Sequence record: NC_041917.1
Length of the DNA: 64,000 bases
Reading direction: 5' to 3' (one strand)
Shown here: piece after piece, positions 2,951 through 56,237 of the stretch
Layout of the letters: each line of letters begins with the position of its first letter
Position numbering within the stretch: position 1 is the stretch's first letter
Position numbers and translations under genes: made by a program
Notes under the pieces: model-generated
What the model saw: only the letters and a program-made list of their open reading frames with translations
Databases searched by the model: none
What the model was told of the DNA's origin: nothing

Positions 2951-3524
2951 AATATCTAATATGATGGATCAGTTCGAAAATGTATGTTTCAGTGGCGGGG
3001 CAGCGGGTGCTGACCGCCTTTTTGGTTTGTGGGCTGCACAAAATGGACATGAAGAAGTCCATTTTTCATTTAAGGGTCACAAAGCACATGTTCCACCTGA
3101 AACTGTTTTAGAACTCCCACTCGATTTATTAACAAGTACTGAAATTATACAAAAATTAAAAGTTGCTAACAAGTCTCTTGGAAGAAGTGTTCCTAGATTT
3201 GGATACGTTTATAATCTACTTGCTCGTAATAGTATGCAAGTATATAGTACTGAACGTGTGTATACAATGGGAATTTTAATTTCTCCTACACAACTTGATG
3301 GTGGTACTGCTTGGGCGGTACAAATGTACTTAGATCAAGAATCTGAGACAAAAGAAATTTATCATTACGACATTGTTGATAAAAAGATATATTCGTATAA
3401 TAATGTATTAAAACAATTCGTAGAAGTACAAACTGTACCAACACCACATGGAAAATGGACAGGTATTGGGACACGCCGAGCTACACAAGAAGATTTAGAA
3501 GCATTTGCTTCAAAATTTGAGTAA
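2937..3524 (+). CDS. Probable SLOG-superfamily (YspA/DprA-like) nucleotide-binding protein
   Basis: SGGAAGAD, LARN and GGTAWAV motifs in SLOG order. Confidence 0.6.
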   Translation: MTLTEISNMMDQFENVCFSGGAAGADRLFGLWAAQNGHEEVHFSFKGHKAHVPPETVLELPLDLLTSTEIIQKLKVANKSLGRSVPRFGYVYNLLARNSMQVYSTERVYTMGILISPTQLDGGTAWAVQMYLDQESETKEIYHYDIVDKKIYSYNNVLKQFVEVQTVPTPHGKWTGIGTRRATQEDLEAFASKFE

Positions 3525-50401: not shown

Positions 50402-50429
50402 ATATACCCCTAAAGTCTTTATATAATTG

Positions 50430-50435
50430 TATTTA
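50430..50435 (-). promoter_or_regulatory. Possible late promoter TAAATA for the endo VII gene
   Basis: Motif 29 bp upstream of the start. Confidence 0.5.
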
Positions 50436-50443
50436 ACGAAATA

Positions 50444-50472
50444 TGGAACGAATTAAAAATATTTGGTATAAT
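50444..50472 (+). promoter_or_regulatory. Early/middle-type promoter TGGAAC-N14-TGGTATAAT facing an ORF-free region
   Basis: Perfect copy of the motif. Confidence 0.85.
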
Positions 50473-50477
50473 AAGAT

Positions 50478-50990
50478 AGTAAAACCCTGTTTGGCAATAC
50501 ATGGATGTGTGTTGACAGTTAGTAAAACCCTGATCTAGTCGAAAAGTAGACAGCAGATGAGAAGTTCAAACAGTTCGTTGTGCAAAAGAAACCCGTTAGA
50601 AGTACGTGCAGTCAATCAAATGCGACATAAGACACCGAGATCACGGCAATGCGGCACATTAAAGAAGTACACTAGGCAAATAGTACTTCCTCGATAGACA
50701 TTTAAGGATCGCACCTTACGAAGTAGCTAAGGGAGTTTTTCTGGATAAGAAAATTGCGATTGATTTATATACAATATAGATCCGTCAAAAATTCAGAAGA
50801 ATAAGTATTAAGATTGATTGTATAGTCTTAATATTAGTGTGGTAAGCCCACGACCGTTGCACATGACCGTAATAGAGAGAAACAGAGCAACCCGCTTTCG
50901 TTCTAGAGATAGAAATTTACGATACAATTAAATCCGACGACTATCATCGTCAGAACAATATTCAGTACCTTTATTGGTACTTTTTTATTG
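50478..50990 (+). ncRNA. Candidate large structured non-coding RNA, about 500 nt, family unassigned
   Basis: Own promoter; no ORF of 60 aa or more; most 60-mers 38-43% GC; at least 8 hairpins with GNRA-type loops and G-U pairs in + sense; ends at a hairpin plus T6. Confidence 0.6.
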
Positions 50991-51180
50991 TCTTCATTCC
51001 CCTGTGGGGGGATGATAAAGTCCTCTACAAATCTCGTCAGTATAACAGTATTAAACGTAGTAAGTATTGAATTGAGTTTGCTTCAGTACAAACGAAGTGA
51101 AGTACAGAACAAACGAAAATTCTTTGACATTCGAAGAATGGCAAATTAAACAGTATGAAATATTCTTAAATTCAAGGTAC

Positions 51181-51206
51181 AAAAAAACCAGCAACTAGTG
51201 CTGGTT
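51181..51206 (-). terminator. Intrinsic terminator of the tail chaperone operon
   Basis: aaccagca-actag-tgctggtt with an A7 tract on + (U7 on -). Confidence 0.85.
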
Positions 51207-51420
51207 ATGATTTTTTGTTTTCACGTTTAATCTTTTTGTTATATTGCTTCACCATCAAATCTTTGTCATTCACTGGCATATTCAAAAGCATTTCATATGA
51301 AGTATTAGGTATATGAACTGCAACTTCCATTAAAGAATTTTTAATTTCTTCGCAGTTGAAACGCAATTCAGATATTTCCTTCATTACTTCTTCTGGTTCT
51401 GAGATGAGAAGCCTTGAACG
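51205..51420 (-). CDS. Downstream tail/baseplate assembly ORF: a -1 frameshift extension of the upstream gene, or a 59 aa protein from ATG 51384
   Basis: Frame is open from 51462; T_TTT_TTC at 51426-51420; TAATG overlap at 51386-51382. Confidence 0.6.
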   Translation of the reverse strand, partial: RSRLLISEPEEVMKEISELRFNCEEIKNSLMEVAVHIPNTSYEMLLNMPVNDKDLMVKQYNKKIKRENKKS

Positions 51421-52259
51421 AAAAAACTGCTTGGATCGAATTGAAGATTTTCCAAAACCCATTCATGACCACATTCAGAACAACCTACGTCCATTTCATG
51501 TGATACCCCAATATTATTAATATAATCTGCTTTTTCACGAATTTGTTTTAAAATAAAAGCAGGTTGTGTTCCTACCCAATCAGCAATAAATTCGTCTTCT
51601 TTAACAATCACACCATCAACTGTTTCGATATAATCAATATTGGCTACAGTCATGTCAAAACTTAGCTGAGTCATTTTTTCAAATACATCAGTAAATTCTT
51701 TCATTTTTTCTTCGTCAGTCATTTCTACATTTTCTAGTAGCTGTGCTCTCTTTTGCTCTTTAAACATTCTAAGACCAAATTCTGAATGTTCTTTCCATGT
51801 GTGAGGTTTAAATTTAATAATTAACCCACCAATATCTTCAAGTATTAGTGTTGGTTGTTCTTCAAGTAATTCAGCACTGTCTAGTAAGTACTGTAAATTA
51901 CGTTCAAAGGCACCATGATGACCACATTCAGGACAATTTACTTCAATTTGATATTCTGTTTCTTTCGTTGCTAATTTTATTCCAATTAGCAATAGTTCAA
52001 CATCTGGTACAAACAAGTCACGTGCATTTGAAATATTTGGTACACAGTTTTGAATAACATTCACTACAGCTTCACCATTCATTAGTGCATCTGGATTGTT
52101 AAACATCAATTCATCACGTGCTGACCGTGCACAAATACCACATTCAACAGTATCGCTAACTAGCACACCTTTTGGATATTTAATTACATCATTACTTACT
52201 AATTTAGTATATAAAGTTTCTACTTTTGTATACTTTGATAAAGGGTTCATTTGATTCAT
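51384..52259 (-). CDS. Baseplate hub/tail assembly chaperone, T4 gp26/gp51-like
   Basis: RDELMFNNPDALMNG...DVELLLIGIK pattern; two CxxC motifs (CPEC, CSEC); start moved to 52259 (GGAG SD). Confidence 0.7.
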   Translation of the reverse strand: MNQMNPLSKYTKVETLYTKLVSNDVIKYPKGVLVSDTVECGICARSARDELMFNNPDALMNGEAVVNVIQNCVPNISNARDLFVPDVELLLIGIKLATKETEYQIEVNCPECGHHGAFERNLQYLLDSAELLEEQPTLILEDIGGLIIKFKPHTWKEHSEFGLRMFKEQKRAQLLENVEMTDEEKMKEFTDVFEKMTQLSFDMTVANIDYIETVDGVIVKEDEFIADWVGTQPAFILKQIREKADYINNIGVSHEMDVGCSECGHEWVLENLQFDPSSFFVQGFSSQNQKK

Positions 52260-52323: not shown

Positions 52324-54474
52324 ATGGCAGGAATTAGCTCAGATTATATCTTGCAACAGATATTAGATCAGAATGTTGCCGCTAATGATAATTTAAGTGC
52401 GATGCGTACCTTACTTGTTGACATTGAAAAAAATGGCAAAACGGGTGGAGGCGGTGGTTCTGGTGGTGGTGACGATGATACCCGTAGAAGAAACCGAAAT
52501 GATAGAAACAATAATGATAGTGCATCATTTTCTAAAGCATTTAAAGATATTTTTGGTGAAATGAAAAATATTGGCGGTTCAGTACTAGGCAACAATGGTT
52601 CTATTCAGAATACTGTTGGTGCAGTTGGTGCATCTGCTAGAGTATTACAATCATCGTTAGGTAAATTACCAGGTCCAATTGGTGCCGTTGCATCAGGATT
52701 TATGCAAATTGTCCAAGCTGGTGTGGCAGTATACGAGTACTTGAACGAACAATTGAATATGTATAATCAATTGAATAGTGCAGGTCTAACTCTTGCTGAT
52801 GGTATGTTAACTGTTAGAAAGGGTGCAGCAGGTGCATTTTTAAGTATCAACGAATACTCGAAAGTACTAGAAAAGAATAGTGATGCCATTGCAGCTATGG
52901 ATGGTCAATATGGTGATGGTGTAGAACATTTTGGTAAATTACTAAATACCGTCCAATTGACACAAGAAAAGATGGGTTTATATGGAGTATCACAGCAACA
53001 ATTAGCTGACCTTACTGCTAAAAACTATAAATTCGAGAAGATGTATTCAGGTCAACAACAATTAAGAAGTATGACTGAATCACAAAGTACTGAAAAATTT
53101 GTCGGTACTATGACATATTTAAGTAAGACAGTTGGTAAAAGTGTAGATGAATTACTTTCTAAATTTAATGATATGGGACAAAATTTAGATACTGGATTAT
53201 CACAAGATGCGTTAACACAGTATTACGGATTATCAGAAGATAAAGCCGCCCAAGTATCAAAAAGTATGAATTCTATTTTTGCTAGTATGGGTGAAGCTGG
53301 TGCTCAATTACAAAAATTGAACGCAAGTAAATTACAAACAAACGCCTTACCTGAAGAATTTAATAACCAGTTTACACAAATGTATACTGACCAAATTAAA
53401 CAACTTCAACTTGCAGGAATTACTGATGAGAAACAACTTCGTCGTCATATGTCACAATATGTAGCTGACCATAAGCGTCAACTAGATGATGAAATTCGTT
53501 ATCAAAATTTGGCAGGTAATACAACAGCCGCAGCATGGTTAAACCAATTAAGAAATATTGAAAATACATTAAATGATCCTAAAAATCAACCAAGTCCTAT
53601 TATTGAAAACTTCACTAATAGATTTAATTTATGGATAGGTAAAACATTCACTGAACCATTTAATAATATGTATGTAGATATTCAGGAGAAAACTGCATCT
53701 TATCTTACTAATTTAGCAGATAATTCAGCAAATGCTTGGGATTTCACTGCTAAGTTAGTTCGTGATGGTTTAAAAGCTATTCCTAATGTTTTTAGTGATG
53801 GGATGACATATCTTGTAAGTTTACTAGAAGGTTGGGCAACTGATTTATTTGGTGATAGTTATACTCAAGTATCCCAATCATTTGAAAATTTCATGAATGA
53901 CTTTATGAACTTGCCAAATATGTTATGGGATTCTATAACTGGTTGGTGGAATAGTAGTCGTGATGATAAGATAGATGGAATAAAATCTGCTGCGAGTTCA
54001 ATGTGGGATAATATTAAGGGTGTTTTCACTGATATAGGAAATACTACTCCACCAGGACAAGAAGAAACTAAAAAATCATTTATGGATATGTATAATTCTT
54101 TAAATGATAAATTGAATACATATTTGAATAAGTTTAAAAGTTGGTGGAATGGGGATGATGAGAATCAACCTACCGGACCAACACCACAACCTACATCAAA
54201 TAAAAATCCACCAATTGCAAATCAACCAAAAACAGTAGGTCAACAGAAAGTAACTGCACCAGCAGAATACACTAAACCTATTAAAATTGAGCAAACGGAT
54301 CAAACTGCACCTGATGAAATGCAGACTGCACAAAATAGTTCTGGCTCAGATGCCACAACTAAGATACTTGCAGCAATACTAAATAACTTAGAAAGTCAAG
54401 GACAGGCAAATAGCCAAGCTGCGATTATTTTAAGACAGATTGCTGATAATACAGAACCTGCTCGAAATGTATAA
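52324..54474 (+). CDS. Probable tape measure protein
   Basis: About 716 aa, helical and A/S/G/Q-rich with spaced Trp/Phe; next to the tail chaperone gene; GAGGA SD favours ATG 52324. Confidence 0.6.
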   Translation: MAGISSDYILQQILDQNVAANDNLSAMRTLLVDIEKNGKTGGGGGSGGGDDDTRRRNRNDRNNNDSASFSKAFKDIFGEMKNIGGSVLGNNGSIQNTVGAVGASARVLQSSLGKLPGPIGAVASGFMQIVQAGVAVYEYLNEQLNMYNQLNSAGLTLADGMLTVRKGAAGAFLSINEYSKVLEKNSDAIAAMDGQYGDGVEHFGKLLNTVQLTQEKMGLYGVSQQQLADLTAKNYKFEKMYSGQQQLRSMTESQSTEKFVGTMTYLSKTVGKSVDELLSKFNDMGQNLDTGLSQDALTQYYGLSEDKAAQVSKSMNSIFASMGEAGAQLQKLNASKLQTNALPEEFNNQFTQMYTDQIKQLQLAGITDEKQLRRHMSQYVADHKRQLDDEIRYQNLAGNTTAAAWLNQLRNIENTLNDPKNQPSPIIENFTNRFNLWIGKTFTEPFNNMYVDIQEKTASYLTNLADNSANAWDFTAKLVRDGLKAIPNVFSDGMTYLVSLLEGWATDLFGDSYTQVSQSFENFMNDFMNLPNMLWDSITGWWNSSRDDKIDGIKSAASSMWDNIKGVFTDIGNTTPPGQEETKKSFMDMYNSLNDKLNTYLNKFKSWWNGDDENQPTGPTPQPTSNKNPPIANQPKTVGQQKVTAPAEYTKPIKIEQTDQTAPDEMQTAQNSSGSDATTKILAAILNNLESQGQANSQAAIILRQIADNTEPARNV

Positions 54475-54491: not shown

Positions 54492-56237
54492 ATGAGTTGG
54501 AAACGACATATGACAATGGGGCGTTCGAAAATTTCGAAGGATACCCGTAACAATTCGACACCAATACAGTCTTCAGGGGCGAAAACTAATTTCGCCTCTT
54601 ACTTACCTGCTGTATACAATGGAATGTCAAACCGTATTGATCGTTATAGACAATATGACCAAATGGATCAAGATCCAGAAATTCGAACTGCACTGAATAT
54701 TATCGCAGATTTTTGTACTCAAAGTACTAAAGATTATGGATTGCCATTTCAGATACAGTACAAAGATACAATGGGTGACACTGAAGTTACTACATTGGAA
54801 GATAGATTAGAATCATGGTCTGATCAGAACCAATTTAAAATAAGAATTTACGATATTATTCGTGGTATTTTGAAATATGGTGATCAGTTCTTTGTTCGTG
54901 ATCCAGAAACATTTGAATGGTATTGGGTAAACCCAATGAATGTTGATAAAGTAGTAGTAAATGAAAGTACTGGTAAAAATCCAGTAATTTATTATATTCG
55001 TGATGTTTCCTTAAACATCAGAGATAAAGTAATGAGTAATTTACAACTAGGATTTGATAAAATGGCATATCCTGGTTCATTACCTAATACATTAGCTGGT
55101 GCTGGTTCACAATACGGTTCAGTTGGTGGTGCTGGCGGTGGTGCAGGTGCAGATAGTTCCAATCCATTCGGTACTAATGGTCAATTGGATGTTTTACCAG
55201 TTGCAGCGGAGCATGTTATTCACTTATCTCTAAACACTGGACAAGATCCGTTCTGGCCTTTTGGTACTAGTATATTAGAAAATATTTTTAAAGTATATAA
55301 ACAAAAAGAATTGTTAGAAGATAGTATAATTATCTATCGTGTACAACGTGCACCAGAACGTAGGGTATTTAAAATTGATGTTGGTGATATGCAACCACAC
55401 CAAGCGATGGCATTCGTTGAACGTGTAAAAAATGATATACACCAACGTAGAATACCATCAAATAAAGGTGGAAGTACTTCATTAATGGATGCAGCTTATA
55501 ACCCATTAAGTATTTTAGAAGACTATTTCTTCCCACAAACCGCAGATGGTCGTGGTTCATCGGTAGAAACACTACCTGGTGGTGATAACTTAGGTCAAAT
55601 TGATGACTTACGTTATTTTAATAATAAATTAATTCGTGGATTACAAATTCCAGCATCATATCTACCAATGGGTCCAGATGATGGTGGTGTAGCACTATTT
55701 GGTGATGGTGCAACTCAAGCTATGGCAAGTGAATTACGTTTTAATAATGAATGTATGCGTTACCAACGTATTATATCTCGTATTTTTGATGATGAATTCA
55801 AACGTTATATGTTAAAAAATGGATATAACATTAGTGCATCTTCATTTGAAGTTACTTTTAATCCACCCATGAACTTTGCAGCGAATCGTAAAGCTGAAAT
55901 GGATGCTAAGTTAATACAAACATATATGCCTCTAAATGATCTCAAATACTTCTCTAAACAGTTCATTATGAAGAAAATGGGCTTTGAACAAGATGATATT
56001 GTTGAGAATGAAAGATTATGGATGCAAGAAAATCCAGCGGCAGTACAAAATAGTCCACAAGAAGTTGATGGAGCAAATGCTGGTCTACAATCTGTTGGTT
56101 TAGAAGCACCAAATAATCCAGAAACTGATTTAGGTATGGATGAAAATGGGAACTTAGAAAGTGCCGATGCAGAATATCAAGAACAAACTGGTGGTCAAGG
56201 TGGATTTGACCCTAATAGTTTAGGTAATTCATTTTAA
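54492..56237 (+). CDS. gp20: Portal protein, T4 gp20-like
   Basis: LLEDSIIIYRVQRAPERRVFKIDVG and EDYFFPQTADGRGSSVETLPGG motifs. Confidence 0.95.
   Translation: MSWKRHMTMGRSKISKDTRNNSTPIQSSGAKTNFASYLPAVYNGMSNRIDRYRQYDQMDQDPEIRTALNIIADFCTQSTKDYGLPFQIQYKDTMGDTEVTTLEDRLESWSDQNQFKIRIYDIIRGILKYGDQFFVRDPETFEWYWVNPMNVDKVVVNESTGKNPVIYYIRDVSLNIRDKVMSNLQLGFDKMAYPGSLPNTLAGAGSQYGSVGGAGGGAGADSSNPFGTNGQLDVLPVAAEHVIHLSLNTGQDPFWPFGTSILENIFKVYKQKELLEDSIIIYRVQRAPERRVFKIDVGDMQPHQAMAFVERVKNDIHQRRIPSNKGGSTSLMDAAYNPLSILEDYFFPQTADGRGSSVETLPGGDNLGQIDDLRYFNNKLIRGLQIPASYLPMGPDDGGVALFGDGATQAMASELRFNNECMRYQRIISRIFDDEFKRYMLKNGYNISASSFEVTFNPPMNFAANRKAEMDAKLIQTYMPLNDLKYFSKQFIMKKMGFEQDDIVENERLWMQENPAAVQNSPQEVDGANAGLQSVGLEAPNNPETDLGMDENGNLESADAEYQEQTGGQGGFDPNSLGNSF

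What the first reader, a model, noticed from the sequence alone, without database searches (positions are those of the whole stretch)
51205..51462. Canonical -1 slippery heptamer linking two tail-assembly ORFs (lambda G/GT-style recoding in a T4-related jumbo phage)
Seen: on the minus strand the gp26/gp51-like ORF reads AGT TTT TTC, an X_XXY_YYZ heptamer T_TTT_TTC at 51426-51420, 11 codons before its stop. The -1 frame is open there and continues to 51205. Slippage would give a 351 aa product (…PSSFF-RSRLLISEPEEVMKEI…) alongside the 291 aa protein. The internal ATG at 51384 has no GGAG-type SD, unlike most genes here. A weak CTTCT/AGAAG stem starts 8 nt downstream. Established: tail assembly chaperones of many long-tailed phages use such frameshifts next to the tape measure gene; T4 itself is not known to. 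Here the putative tape measure gene is adjacent but divergent. Caveat: TAATG coupling at 51386-51382 is an alternative, and this genome uses TAATG elsewhere (2005, 45019).
Basis: partly seen in the sequence, partly recalled or inferred. Interest (0 to 1): 0.75.

Follow-up and report, generated by a model that had tools for sequence, protein, structure and literature searches.

The report
Conserved frameshift in jumbo-phage tail chaperone
A run of six T's near the end of a T4 gp26/gp51-like gene of Serratia phage BF is almost certainly a programmed -1 frameshift site that makes a short and a long form of a tail assembly chaperone; the site is kept in every relative examined but is annotated in none of the public records I inspected.

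Summary
The window is Serratia phage BF, a Rak2-like jumbo phage.

On the minus strand, the 291-aa gp26/gp51-like gene (PF12322) reads AGT TTT TTC at 51428-51420. The -1 frame is open from there to 51205.

One genome proves little: the window holds 97 in-frame heptamers of this shape. The comparison across genomes is what decides it. In 30 lineages, down to about 27% protein identity:
- The T run is always there (6 T in 27 lineages, 7 in 2, 9 in 1).
- The codon before it always ends in T, although it encodes 8 different amino acids.
- The 0-frame stop lies 1-11 codons after the heptamer.
- The first ATG of the downstream ORF lies 3-58 codons after the run, and one lineage has none.
- The -1 frame stays open for 69-82 codons.
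- Sequence constraint switches to the -1 frame at the run.

I found no conserved stimulatory RNA structure.

The gene family is the tail assembly chaperone (TAC) of T4-like phages (Vladimirov et al. 2022). T4 makes the short and long forms from two genes, 26 and 51. BF has one gene plus recoding. In Gram-positive and cyanobacterial relatives the gene sits in the classical sheath-tube-TAC-tape measure position.

It is a new member of a known kind. Ribosomal slippage cannot be separated from transcriptional slippage by sequence alone.

The parts
51384..52259 (-). 0-frame gene for the short form (BF gp248, 291 aa). It belongs to the T4 gp26/gp51 family and is annotated 'baseplate hub subunit'; here it is read as TAC-N. 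GGAG at 52268-52265.
   Evidence: PF12322 at 84.5 bits against a cut-off of 24.5, and phrog_150 at 3.5e-31. AlphaFold2 model with pLDDT 88.7; residues 283-291, after the Phe-Phe, are disordered. Foldseek against BFVD gives 70 hits at E <= 1e-3, named T4-like baseplate hub or assembly proteins.
51420..51426 (-). Slippery heptamer T_TTT_TTC in X_XXY_YYZ phase. It is the proposed -1 shift site.
   Evidence: Sequence read. The six T's are invariant in 25 of 25 non-redundant lineages; the 7th base is C in 92%. Among 30 lineages the run is 6, 7 or 9 T long in 27, 2 and 1 of them, and the preceding codon always ends in T (9 codons, 8 amino acids).
51205..51420 (-). -1-frame extension: 71 codons plus a stop. 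It is read only after the shift and is the C-terminal part of the 351-aa long form.
   Evidence: The -1 frame is open in all lineages for 69-82 codons. The first codon is Arg in 26 of 30, using all four CGN codons. The least-conserved codon position switches to the -1 frame's third position after the run. The AlphaFold2 model is three helices, pLDDT 84.
51205..51384 (-). Annotated 59-aa gene (BF gp247, phrog_18291). It is the part of the extension that follows an ATG in a TAATG overlap.
   Evidence: The ATG position is not conserved: the first ATG lies 3 to 58 codons after the run, and PA5oct has none. The ORF is unannotated in fENko-Kae01, PA5oct, LIS04 and RsoM2USA.
51386..51412 (-). Weak stem-loop (6 + 3 pairs) that begins 7-8 nt after the heptamer. 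It is not supported as a conserved stimulator.
   Evidence: The single-sequence fold has z = -0.41. RNAalifold predicts no pairs on 23 lineages. 68% of cells are paired against 42-55% in the slid controls, and there is no real covariation. No Rfam match.
51186..51206 (.). Intrinsic-terminator-like hairpin that abuts the stop of the extension. It reads as a terminator on both strands.
   Evidence: 8-pair stem followed by a T run.
52324..54474 (+). Divergently transcribed virion protein (BF gp249), the putative tape measure protein. It is the expected client of the chaperone.
   Evidence: phrog_14121, plus weak tape-measure PHROG hits at about 1e-6. Annotated 'putative tape measure protein' in pEa_SNUABM_12. 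Orthologues were detected in CBB and phAPEC6 virions.
54510..56237 (+). T4-type portal gene. It marks the conserved neighbourhood: portal, tape-measure-like gene, then the divergent chaperone gene.
   Evidence: PF07230 at 7.9e-118. The same order is found in metagenomic relatives L044, L046 and L047.

Best explanation
The gene at 52259-51384 encodes the tail assembly chaperone of this T4-related jumbo phage.

Proposed mechanism:
- Most ribosomes read it in the 0 frame and stop at 51386-51384. This gives the 291-aa short form, whose last 9-11 residues are an unconserved, disordered tail.
- A minority of ribosomes slip back one base at U_UUU_UUC (51426-51420), where both Phe-tRNAs can re-pair.
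- These ribosomes continue in the -1 frame for 71 more codons to 51205, giving a 351-aa long form.

By analogy with lambda G/GT and with T4 gp26 (short) and gp51 (long), I infer that the shared N-terminal body binds the tape-measure-like protein gp249, and that the helical extension, present in few copies, recruits the tail tube subunit. Neither form would end up in the virion.

Shown: the site, its phase, its invariance, the open -1 frame, the switch of constraint to that frame, and family membership.

Inferred: that the shift is ribosomal, its efficiency, and the division of labour between the two forms.
For: Anatomy.

Conservation:
- All 14 phage-record loci first inspected, 21 IMG/VR loci, and lineages found independently of any motif (tblastn, protein-word search) carry the T run and an open -1 frame.
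- The tabulation of 30 lineages is.
- A -1-frame stop abuts the run in two lineages. In nine lineages the 0-frame stop follows the run by a single codon. The only stretch open in both frames in every lineage is therefore the run plus 3 nt.

Constraint: upstream of the run the 0-frame third position is the least conserved (0.61). Downstream, the -1-frame third position is (0.54 and 0.45, against 0.55-0.73 for the other two positions).

No conserved start codon.

One gene per genome: tblastn finds a single place per record in the jumbo phages. T4 has two PF12322 genes, gp26 of 208 aa and gp51 of 249 aa with an extra C-terminal tail.

No in-frame fusion of the extension exists among 1.84 billion representative proteins; there were 9 hits, all of 51-67 aa.

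Chaperone identity:
- The literature.
- Gene order sheath-tube-PF12322 gene-shifted ORF-tape measure in HSE3, SP-15, LIS04 and Mel-JY01.
- The hub and the extension ORF are absent from the CBB and phAPEC6 virion proteomes, while the tape-measure-like neighbour is present.
Against: - There is no direct protein or ribosome evidence.
- I found no conserved downstream structure or upstream Shine-Dalgarno-like stimulator, so efficiency may be low.
- A T run gives the same long product if RNA polymerase adds one U. T runs are also kept in relatives whose downstream ORF is in the +1 frame, and one -1 lineage has nine T's. Both points fit transcriptional slippage as well.
- BF itself has an ATG in a TAATG overlap, so some independent 59-aa product is possible.
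- Homology of the extension to the gp51 tail is only weakly supported.
- The fold of the N-terminal body did not match solved chaperone structures significantly. The HK97 chaperone 2ob9 came at rank 9 with E 0.74 and probability 0.35.
Confidence: 0.75

Rival explanations
1. Transcriptional slippage. RNA polymerase occasionally adds one U when copying the T run, so a fraction of mRNAs carry the two ORFs in one frame. The protein products are the same as for ribosomal frameshifting.
For: - The conserved element is a homopolymer run whose length, not only its codon phase, is kept: the preceding codon always ends in T.
- Run length is 7 in two lineages and 9 in RsoM2USA.
- Relatives that need a +1 change of frame (SP-15, LIS04, Mel-JY01) also have a T6-T7 run at the same Phe-Phe, in another phase. 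Loss of one U would serve them.
- No ribosomal stimulator was found.
Against: - The run is exactly 6 in 27 of 30 lineages. From general knowledge, this is shorter than the runs of about 8-9 or more at which bacterial RNA polymerase slips appreciably.
- The phase is exactly the canonical X_XXY_YYZ one.
- HSE3 and GXN1 shift frame without any run longer than three T's, so at least some family members cannot use a homopolymer mechanism.
Confidence: 0.13
2. There is no recoding. Two separate proteins are made: the 291-aa protein, and a 59-aa protein translated by termination-reinitiation at the TAATG overlap. The heptamer is only the codons for a conserved Phe-Phe.
For: - BF, the Yersinia phages and 121Q-type phages have an ATG that overlaps the stop, and all public annotations call two genes.
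- TAATG overlaps occur elsewhere in the window.
Against: - The ATG is not conserved. Its offset from the run is 3-58 codons, and PA5oct has none.
- In 7t3, Hallingskeid and EJP2 the first ATG lies 20 codons after the start of the run, beyond residues that are conserved in the -1 frame.
- Arg is encoded by all four CGN codons directly after the run.
- The preceding codon ends in T for 8 different amino acids.
- The -1 frame never has a stop between the run and the ORF in 30 lineages.
- No Shine-Dalgarno motif lies before the BF ATG.
Confidence: 0.04

Closest known systems
Conserved programmed frameshift of tail assembly chaperone genes of long-tailed phages (lambda G/GT; Xu, Hendrix and Duda 2004, cited in PMC9024508 and PMC12846349)
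   Same: [quoted passage not shown]
- The downstream ORF lacks a conserved start.
- The locus is linked to the tape measure gene.
- The products are absent from virions.
   Different: - The protein family differs: PF12322, about 280 aa, with Cys pairs.
- There is no significant match to solved chaperone folds.
- In BF the gene is divergent from the tape-measure-like gene rather than lying between the tube and tape measure genes. The classical order is seen only in distant relatives.
- The slippery site is a pure U run.
T4 gp26 and gp51, identified as the tail assembly chaperones of T4-like phages (Vladimirov, Gautam and Davidson 2022, Virology 566:9; known to me only through PMC10885494 and PMC12846349)
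   Same: - Same Pfam family and fold.
- The short form ends just after a Phe-Phe: T4 gp26 stops 3 residues after it.
- The long form carries an extra C-terminal tail of about 50-70 residues.
- Both lie next to portal, tape measure or hub genes and are divergent from the tape measure operon.
   Different: - T4 has two paralogous genes and no heptamer. BF has one gene and a recoding site.
- Homology between the BF extension and the gp51 tail is only suggested. A junction pattern is present in 64 of 94 gp51 orthologues at residue 200 and occurs once in the six-frame window, at the -1 piece. Profile hits are weak but colinear.
-1 frameshift proposed at a conserved GTTTTT motif in the chaperone gene of Pakpunavirus and Andersonviridae phages (PMC12846349). 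That paper also cites a poly-T site in the T7 major capsid gene.
   Same: - A U-rich slippery site near the 3' end of TAC-N.
- The -1 frame is uninterrupted across divergent genomes.
- The downstream ORF is routinely annotated as 'hypothetical protein'.
- The argument is comparative, as it is here.
   Different: A different protein family and different phage groups. Here the run is six T's in strict X_XXY_YYZ phase.
Transcriptional slippage on homopolymer runs (general knowledge)
   Same: A homopolymeric T run gives access to another frame. Runs of 7 and 9 T occur in some relatives.
   Different: The run is only 6 nt in 27 of 30 lineages, and it is in the canonical ribosomal phase.

Membership tests
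PF12322 T4_baseplate (T4 gp26/gp51 family) | Match to the family profile above Pfam's gathering score | tested here: met
   84.5 bits against a cut-off of 24.5, covering residues 55-280. T4 gp26 and gp51 both match the same model.
PF12322 T4_baseplate (T4 gp26/gp51 family) | Shared fold with named T4-like hub or assembly proteins | tested here: met
   Foldseek against BFVD: 70 hits at E <= 1e-3. The best is 1e-23 with TM 0.83. The hits include 'Baseplate hub assembly protein, bacteriophage T4-like'.
PF12322 T4_baseplate (T4 gp26/gp51 family) | Long form carries the gp51-type C-terminal tail (PF28602 in precomputed annotations) | tested here: inconclusive
   - hhalign E 0.0038, probability 8.7%, colinear at the C-termini.
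- The extension HMM hits gp51 tails at E 0.03-0.4.
- The junction pattern is shared.
- No PHROG or BFVD link.
- PF28602 is not in the local Pfam copy.
Frameshift-dependent tail assembly chaperone (G/GT type) | [quoted passage not shown] | tested here: met
   T_TTT_TTC lies 11 codons before the stop and is kept in 30 of 30 lineages.
Frameshift-dependent tail assembly chaperone (G/GT type) | Downstream ORF is conserved in the shifted frame from the slip site, without a conserved start of its own | tested here: met
Frameshift-dependent tail assembly chaperone (G/GT type) | Position between the major tail/tube gene and the tape measure gene | tested here: not met
   In BF the gene is adjacent to the tape-measure-like gene but divergent from it, and no tube gene is upstream. 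The feature is met in the relatives HSE3, SP-15, LIS04 and Mel-JY01.
Frameshift-dependent tail assembly chaperone (G/GT type) | Fold of solved tail assembly chaperones | tested here: inconclusive
   No PDB hit at E <= 0.001. The HK97 chaperone 2ob9 came at rank 9 with E 0.74 and probability 0.35, the highest probability in the list. Sequence profiles found nothing in the PDB.
Frameshift-dependent tail assembly chaperone (G/GT type) | Two products made in a fixed ratio, both needed for tail assembly, neither in the virion | not testable with these tools
   Only indirect evidence: the hub and extension ORFs are absent from the CBB and phAPEC6 virion proteomes. They also carry no mass-spectrometry note in the PA5oct and fENko-Kae01 records, where the neighbouring gene has one.
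Transcriptional slippage site | Homopolymer run long enough for appreciable polymerase slippage (about 8-9 nt or more; general knowledge) | tested here: not met
   Six T in BF and in 27 of 30 lineages. Only RsoM2USA has nine.

The most novel reading that the evidence does not exclude
The T run at the Phe-Phe that ends the PF12322 domain may be one ancient recoding signal. It would be kept across the deepest splits of T4-related tail modules and used in both directions: -1 in Gram-negative jumbo phages and +1 in Bacillus, Listeria and Microcystis myophages. That could work by a mechanism that is not purely ribosomal. On this reading the T4 pair gp26/gp51 is a later version in which a duplication replaced recoding.
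Probability: 0.3. Interest if true: 0.65.

Novelty: new member of a known kind. Interest (0 to 1): 0.5.

Why it matters
- **Annotation.** It corrects a whole group of jumbo phages: Rak2-like phages, PA5oct-like phages, Atu_ph07, SCTP-2, XacN1-like phages and many metagenomic relatives. A 'baseplate hub subunit' plus a 'hypothetical protein' should be read as one recoded tail assembly chaperone locus. In two Yersinia phage records the gene is even named a heavy-metal ATPase.
- **Link to T4.** It shows the recoded one-gene arrangement within the same protein family that, in T4, makes the short and long chaperone forms from two genes. Which state is ancestral can therefore be tested by distribution on a tree.
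- **Mechanism.** It offers an unusually clean natural series in which to ask what a bare U run needs in order to shift. The same site occurs in 30 lineages with -1 use and in 5 with +1 use, with runs of 6, 7 and 9 T.

Tried and rejected
- **Downstream stimulatory RNA structure.** The BF fold is no better than shuffles (z -0.41). RNAalifold predicts no pairs on 23 lineages. No Rfam family matched.
- **T4 late-promoter motif.** TATAAATA occurs only twice in the window, neither time near the locus.
- **Extension versus the gp51 tail.**
  - hhalign was weak.
  - A narrow gp51 HMM did not even find the BF N-terminal body, so its silence on the tail says nothing.
  - The extension HMM gave only marginal gp51 hits.
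  - PHROG scans of ten extension pieces gave no phrog_150 or phrog_634 hit.
  - Foldseek of the extension model found only its own orthologue.
- **Solved structures.** Sequence profiles and fold search gave nothing significant.
- **In-frame fusions of the extension.** None were found in the large protein collections.
- **The key paper.** Vladimirov et al. 2022 is not held in the library. I cannot say whether it already covers Rak2-like phages.
- **Structure of the long form.** I did not predict or align it, because the frames may not be joined. The two pieces were analysed apart.

Full report
**What the window is.** The 1.7 kb around the finding is 100% identical to Serratia phage BF (NC_041917, Eneladusvirus), a 357-kb Rak2-like jumbo myophage. 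Window position equals record position minus 124000. Genes on the minus strand:
- BF gp248, 'baseplate hub subunit', at 52259-51384, 291 aa.
- BF gp247, 'hypothetical protein', at 51384-51205, 59 aa.
- A hairpin terminator at 51206-51186.

Genes running divergently on the plus strand:
- gp249, a virion protein with weak tape-measure similarity, at 52324-54474.
- The T4-type portal gene.

**Check of the observation.**
- The 0 frame reads AGT TTT TTC at 51428-51420.
- T_TTT_TTC is in the X_XXY_YYZ phase.
- The stop follows 11 codons later.
- The -1 frame is open from 51462 to 51205.
- The long product would have 280 + 71 = 351 residues.
- The ATG at 51384 overlaps the stop as TAATG, and no GGAG-type motif precedes it. 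The upstream gene, by contrast, has GGAG 5 nt before its ATG.

**Is it more than chance?** In one genome, no. The window has 34% G+C, 18 copies of TTTTTTC, and 97 in-frame heptamers of this shape in ORFs of at least 100 aa. Only this one is followed by a -1 frame that runs at least 40 codons past the 0-frame stop. The case therefore rests on comparison with other genomes.

**Comparative evidence.** I collected the locus from several sources:
- 14 phage records by DNA similarity.
- 21 IMG/VR contigs by a protein-pattern scan.
- 7 distant phages by tblastn.
- 4 metagenomic or genomic contigs by exact look-up of distant protein hits.
- 4 further phages by tblastn with a Bacillus-phage homologue.

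One of the two patterns in the IMG/VR scan contained the Phe-Phe motif, so that set is biased for the amino acids. It is not biased for codon choice or for the -1 ORF, and the other sets are unbiased.

The 30 lineages with a -1 arrangement include BF, the Yersinia phages, CBB, GAP32, XbC2, Kaldavass, 7t3, Hallingskeid, EJP2, 121Q/BF17, RaK2, PA5oct, Atu_ph07, SCTP-2, CM1, Xoo-sp13, RsoM2USA and uncultured relatives down to about 27% protein identity. In them:
- The T run is 6 nt in 27 lineages, 7 in 2 and 9 in 1.
- The codon before the run is one of 9 different codons for 8 amino acids, and all of them end in T.
- The first -1-frame codon after the two Phe codons is Arg in 26 lineages, spelt CGA, CGT, CGC and CGG (9, 7, 6 and 4 times).
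- The 0-frame stop lies 1 to 11 codons after the heptamer.
- The -1 frame then stays open for 69 to 82 codons.
- Upstream of the run the -1 frame is open for only 0 to 19 codons.
- The first ATG in the -1 frame lies 3 to 58 codons after the start of the run, and PA5oct has none.

Two lineages have a -1-frame stop that abuts the run, and nine have the 0-frame stop one codon after it. So the only stretch open in both frames in every lineage is the run plus 3 nt.

In an alignment anchored on the run (25 non-redundant lineages):
- The six T's are invariant, and the seventh base is C in 92%.
- Upstream of the run, the least conserved codon position is the third position of the 0 frame (0.61).
- Downstream of the run, it is the third position of the -1 frame (0.54, then 0.45).

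At the protein level, the 0-frame tails after the Phe-Phe differ in length and sequence. The -1-frame pieces align from their first residue.

The finding passed it.

**Stimulators.** I found none.
- The BF sequence after the run folds no better than shuffled sequence (z = -0.41).
- RNAalifold predicts no shared pairs.
Its bases also encode conserved Leu-Leu and Glu-Glu in the -1 frame, and there is no real covariation.
- Rfam gives nothing.

**What the protein is.**
- The 291-aa protein is a clear member of PF12322.
- Its AlphaFold2 model is confident (pLDDT 88.7) up to the Phe-Phe and disordered after it.
- The model matches predicted structures of T4-like 'baseplate hub' and 'hub assembly' proteins.
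- T4 has two members of this family, which are divergently transcribed. gp26 has 208 aa and stops 3 residues after a Phe-Phe. gp51 has 249 aa, with the same domain plus a tail of about 48 residues.
- According to PMC10885494, Vladimirov, Gautam and Davidson (2022) identified these as the tail assembly chaperones of T4-like phages, with the short and long forms coming from two genes instead of a frameshift. PMC12846349 cites the same paper for poly-T -1 signals in TAC-N genes of T4-like phages. I could not read the paper itself.
- In the jumbo phages tblastn finds one copy of the gene per genome.

**Independent support for a chaperone role.**
- In Bacillus phages vB_BceM-HSE3 and SP-15, Listeria phage LIS04 and Microcystis phage Mel-JY01, the PF12322 gene lies in the classical position: tail sheath, tail tube, this gene, a short shifted ORF, then tape measure.
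- In the virion proteomes of CBB (PMC5259590) and phAPEC6 (PMC7247149), the tape-measure-like neighbour is detected, but neither the PF12322 protein nor the small ORF is.
- The PA5oct and fENko-Kae01 records mark the neighbouring gene, not this one, as found by mass spectrometry.

**Extension versus the gp51 tail.** That the two are homologous is plausible but not shown.
- Both follow the same domain end, and the BF piece is predicted helical.
- A pattern that I defined after seeing both is found at residue 200 in 64 of 94 gp51 orthologues. The pattern is Phe, 1-3 residues, Leu-Leu, 2-3 residues, Pro, Asp/Glu, Glu, Ile/Val. It occurs exactly once in the 55,917 residues of the six-frame window, directly after the heptamer in the -1 frame.
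- Profile comparisons give only weak, colinear matches of the two C-termini.
- PHROG and BFVD searches give no link.

**Mechanism.** The phase and shape of the site are those of tandem -1 slippage of two Phe-tRNAs, and I take that as the most likely mechanism (0.75). The same long protein would arise if RNA polymerase added one U. Three points favour the polymerase rival:
- The run of nine T's in RsoM2USA.
- The lack of a ribosomal stimulator.
- SP-15, LIS04 and Mel-JY01 keep a T6-T7 run at the same Phe-Phe in a different phase, while their downstream ORF lies in the +1 frame.

Two points count against it:
- The run is only six T's in 27 of 30 lineages.
- HSE3 and GXN1 change frame with no run longer than three T's.

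Independent initiation at the TAATG may occur in BF, but it cannot explain the conservation.

**Novelty.**
- None of the public records I inspected annotates a joined or slipped CDS here.
- Names for the gene range from 'baseplate hub' to 'Lead, cadmium, zinc and mercury transporting ATPase'.
- The kind of system is well known: a frameshifted tail assembly chaperone. The identity of the family as the T4-type chaperone is published.
- I therefore rate this a new member of a known kind, with the caveat that the 2022 paper may already mention these phages.

- I built, folded and searched no sequence that joins the two frames. The two pieces were always handled apart.
- I stopped writing them, give counts in this report instead, and have deleted nothing.

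Noticed in passing
L048 (Bacillus phage SP-15) about 3160-3440; L049 (Listeria phage LIS04) about 3150-3450; L050 (Microcystis phage Mel-JY01) about 3180-3470; L042 (Bacillus phage HSE3) 2170-2392; L041 (Streptococcus phage GXN1) about 2080-2450: In these relatives the ORF after the PF12322 gene is in the +1 frame, not the -1 frame. SP-15, LIS04 and Mel-JY01 still have a T6-T7 run at the Phe-Phe but in another phase. HSE3 and GXN1 have only TTCTTTC. In four of them (HSE3, SP-15, LIS04, Mel-JY01) the locus lies between the tail tube gene and the tape measure gene or a large gene in its place; the GXN1 record is too sparsely annotated to tell.
   Followed up: partly
L051 (Ralstonia phage RsoM2USA) about 3225-3480: This lineage has the same -1 arrangement but a run of nine T's, a length at which polymerase slippage is plausible. 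The downstream ORF (91 open codons) is not annotated.
   Followed up: partly
L043 (T4, NC_000866 112000-124000) 3803-4429: T4 gene 26 stops 3 codons after a Phe-Phe and has no slippery heptamer there. Its stop overlaps the ATG of gene 25, which is therefore in the -1 frame. This is the same geometry as in BF, but gene 25 is an unrelated baseplate wedge gene. An internal in-frame product, 26', is annotated.
   Followed up: partly
window 50402-51185: About 800 nt between the endonuclease VII gene and the terminator hold no annotated gene in BF. The same spot holds an adenine methyltransferase gene in Yersinia phage fHe-Yen9-04 (L003 1755-2561), a 318-aa ORF in fENko-Kae01, and assorted small ORFs in other relatives. 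It looks like a variable insertion spot.
   Followed up: partly
L002 1956-2831; L003 2768-3643: The Yersinia phage orthologues of the chaperone gene are annotated 'Lead, cadmium, zinc and mercury transporting ATPase; Copper-translocating P-type ATPase'. Some JGI copies are named 'ribosomal protein S27E'. These names probably come from the Cys-x-x-Cys pairs and are misannotations.
   Followed up: no
gp51 orthologues P0001-P0092: Precomputed annotations give gp51 orthologues a second Pfam family, PF28602, besides PF12322. It is presumably the C-terminal tail. It is not in the local Pfam copy, so the BF extension could not be scored against it.
   Followed up: no
window 51186-51206: The hairpin that ends the chaperone operon is followed by T runs on both strands, so it could terminate transcription from either side.
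   Followed up: no
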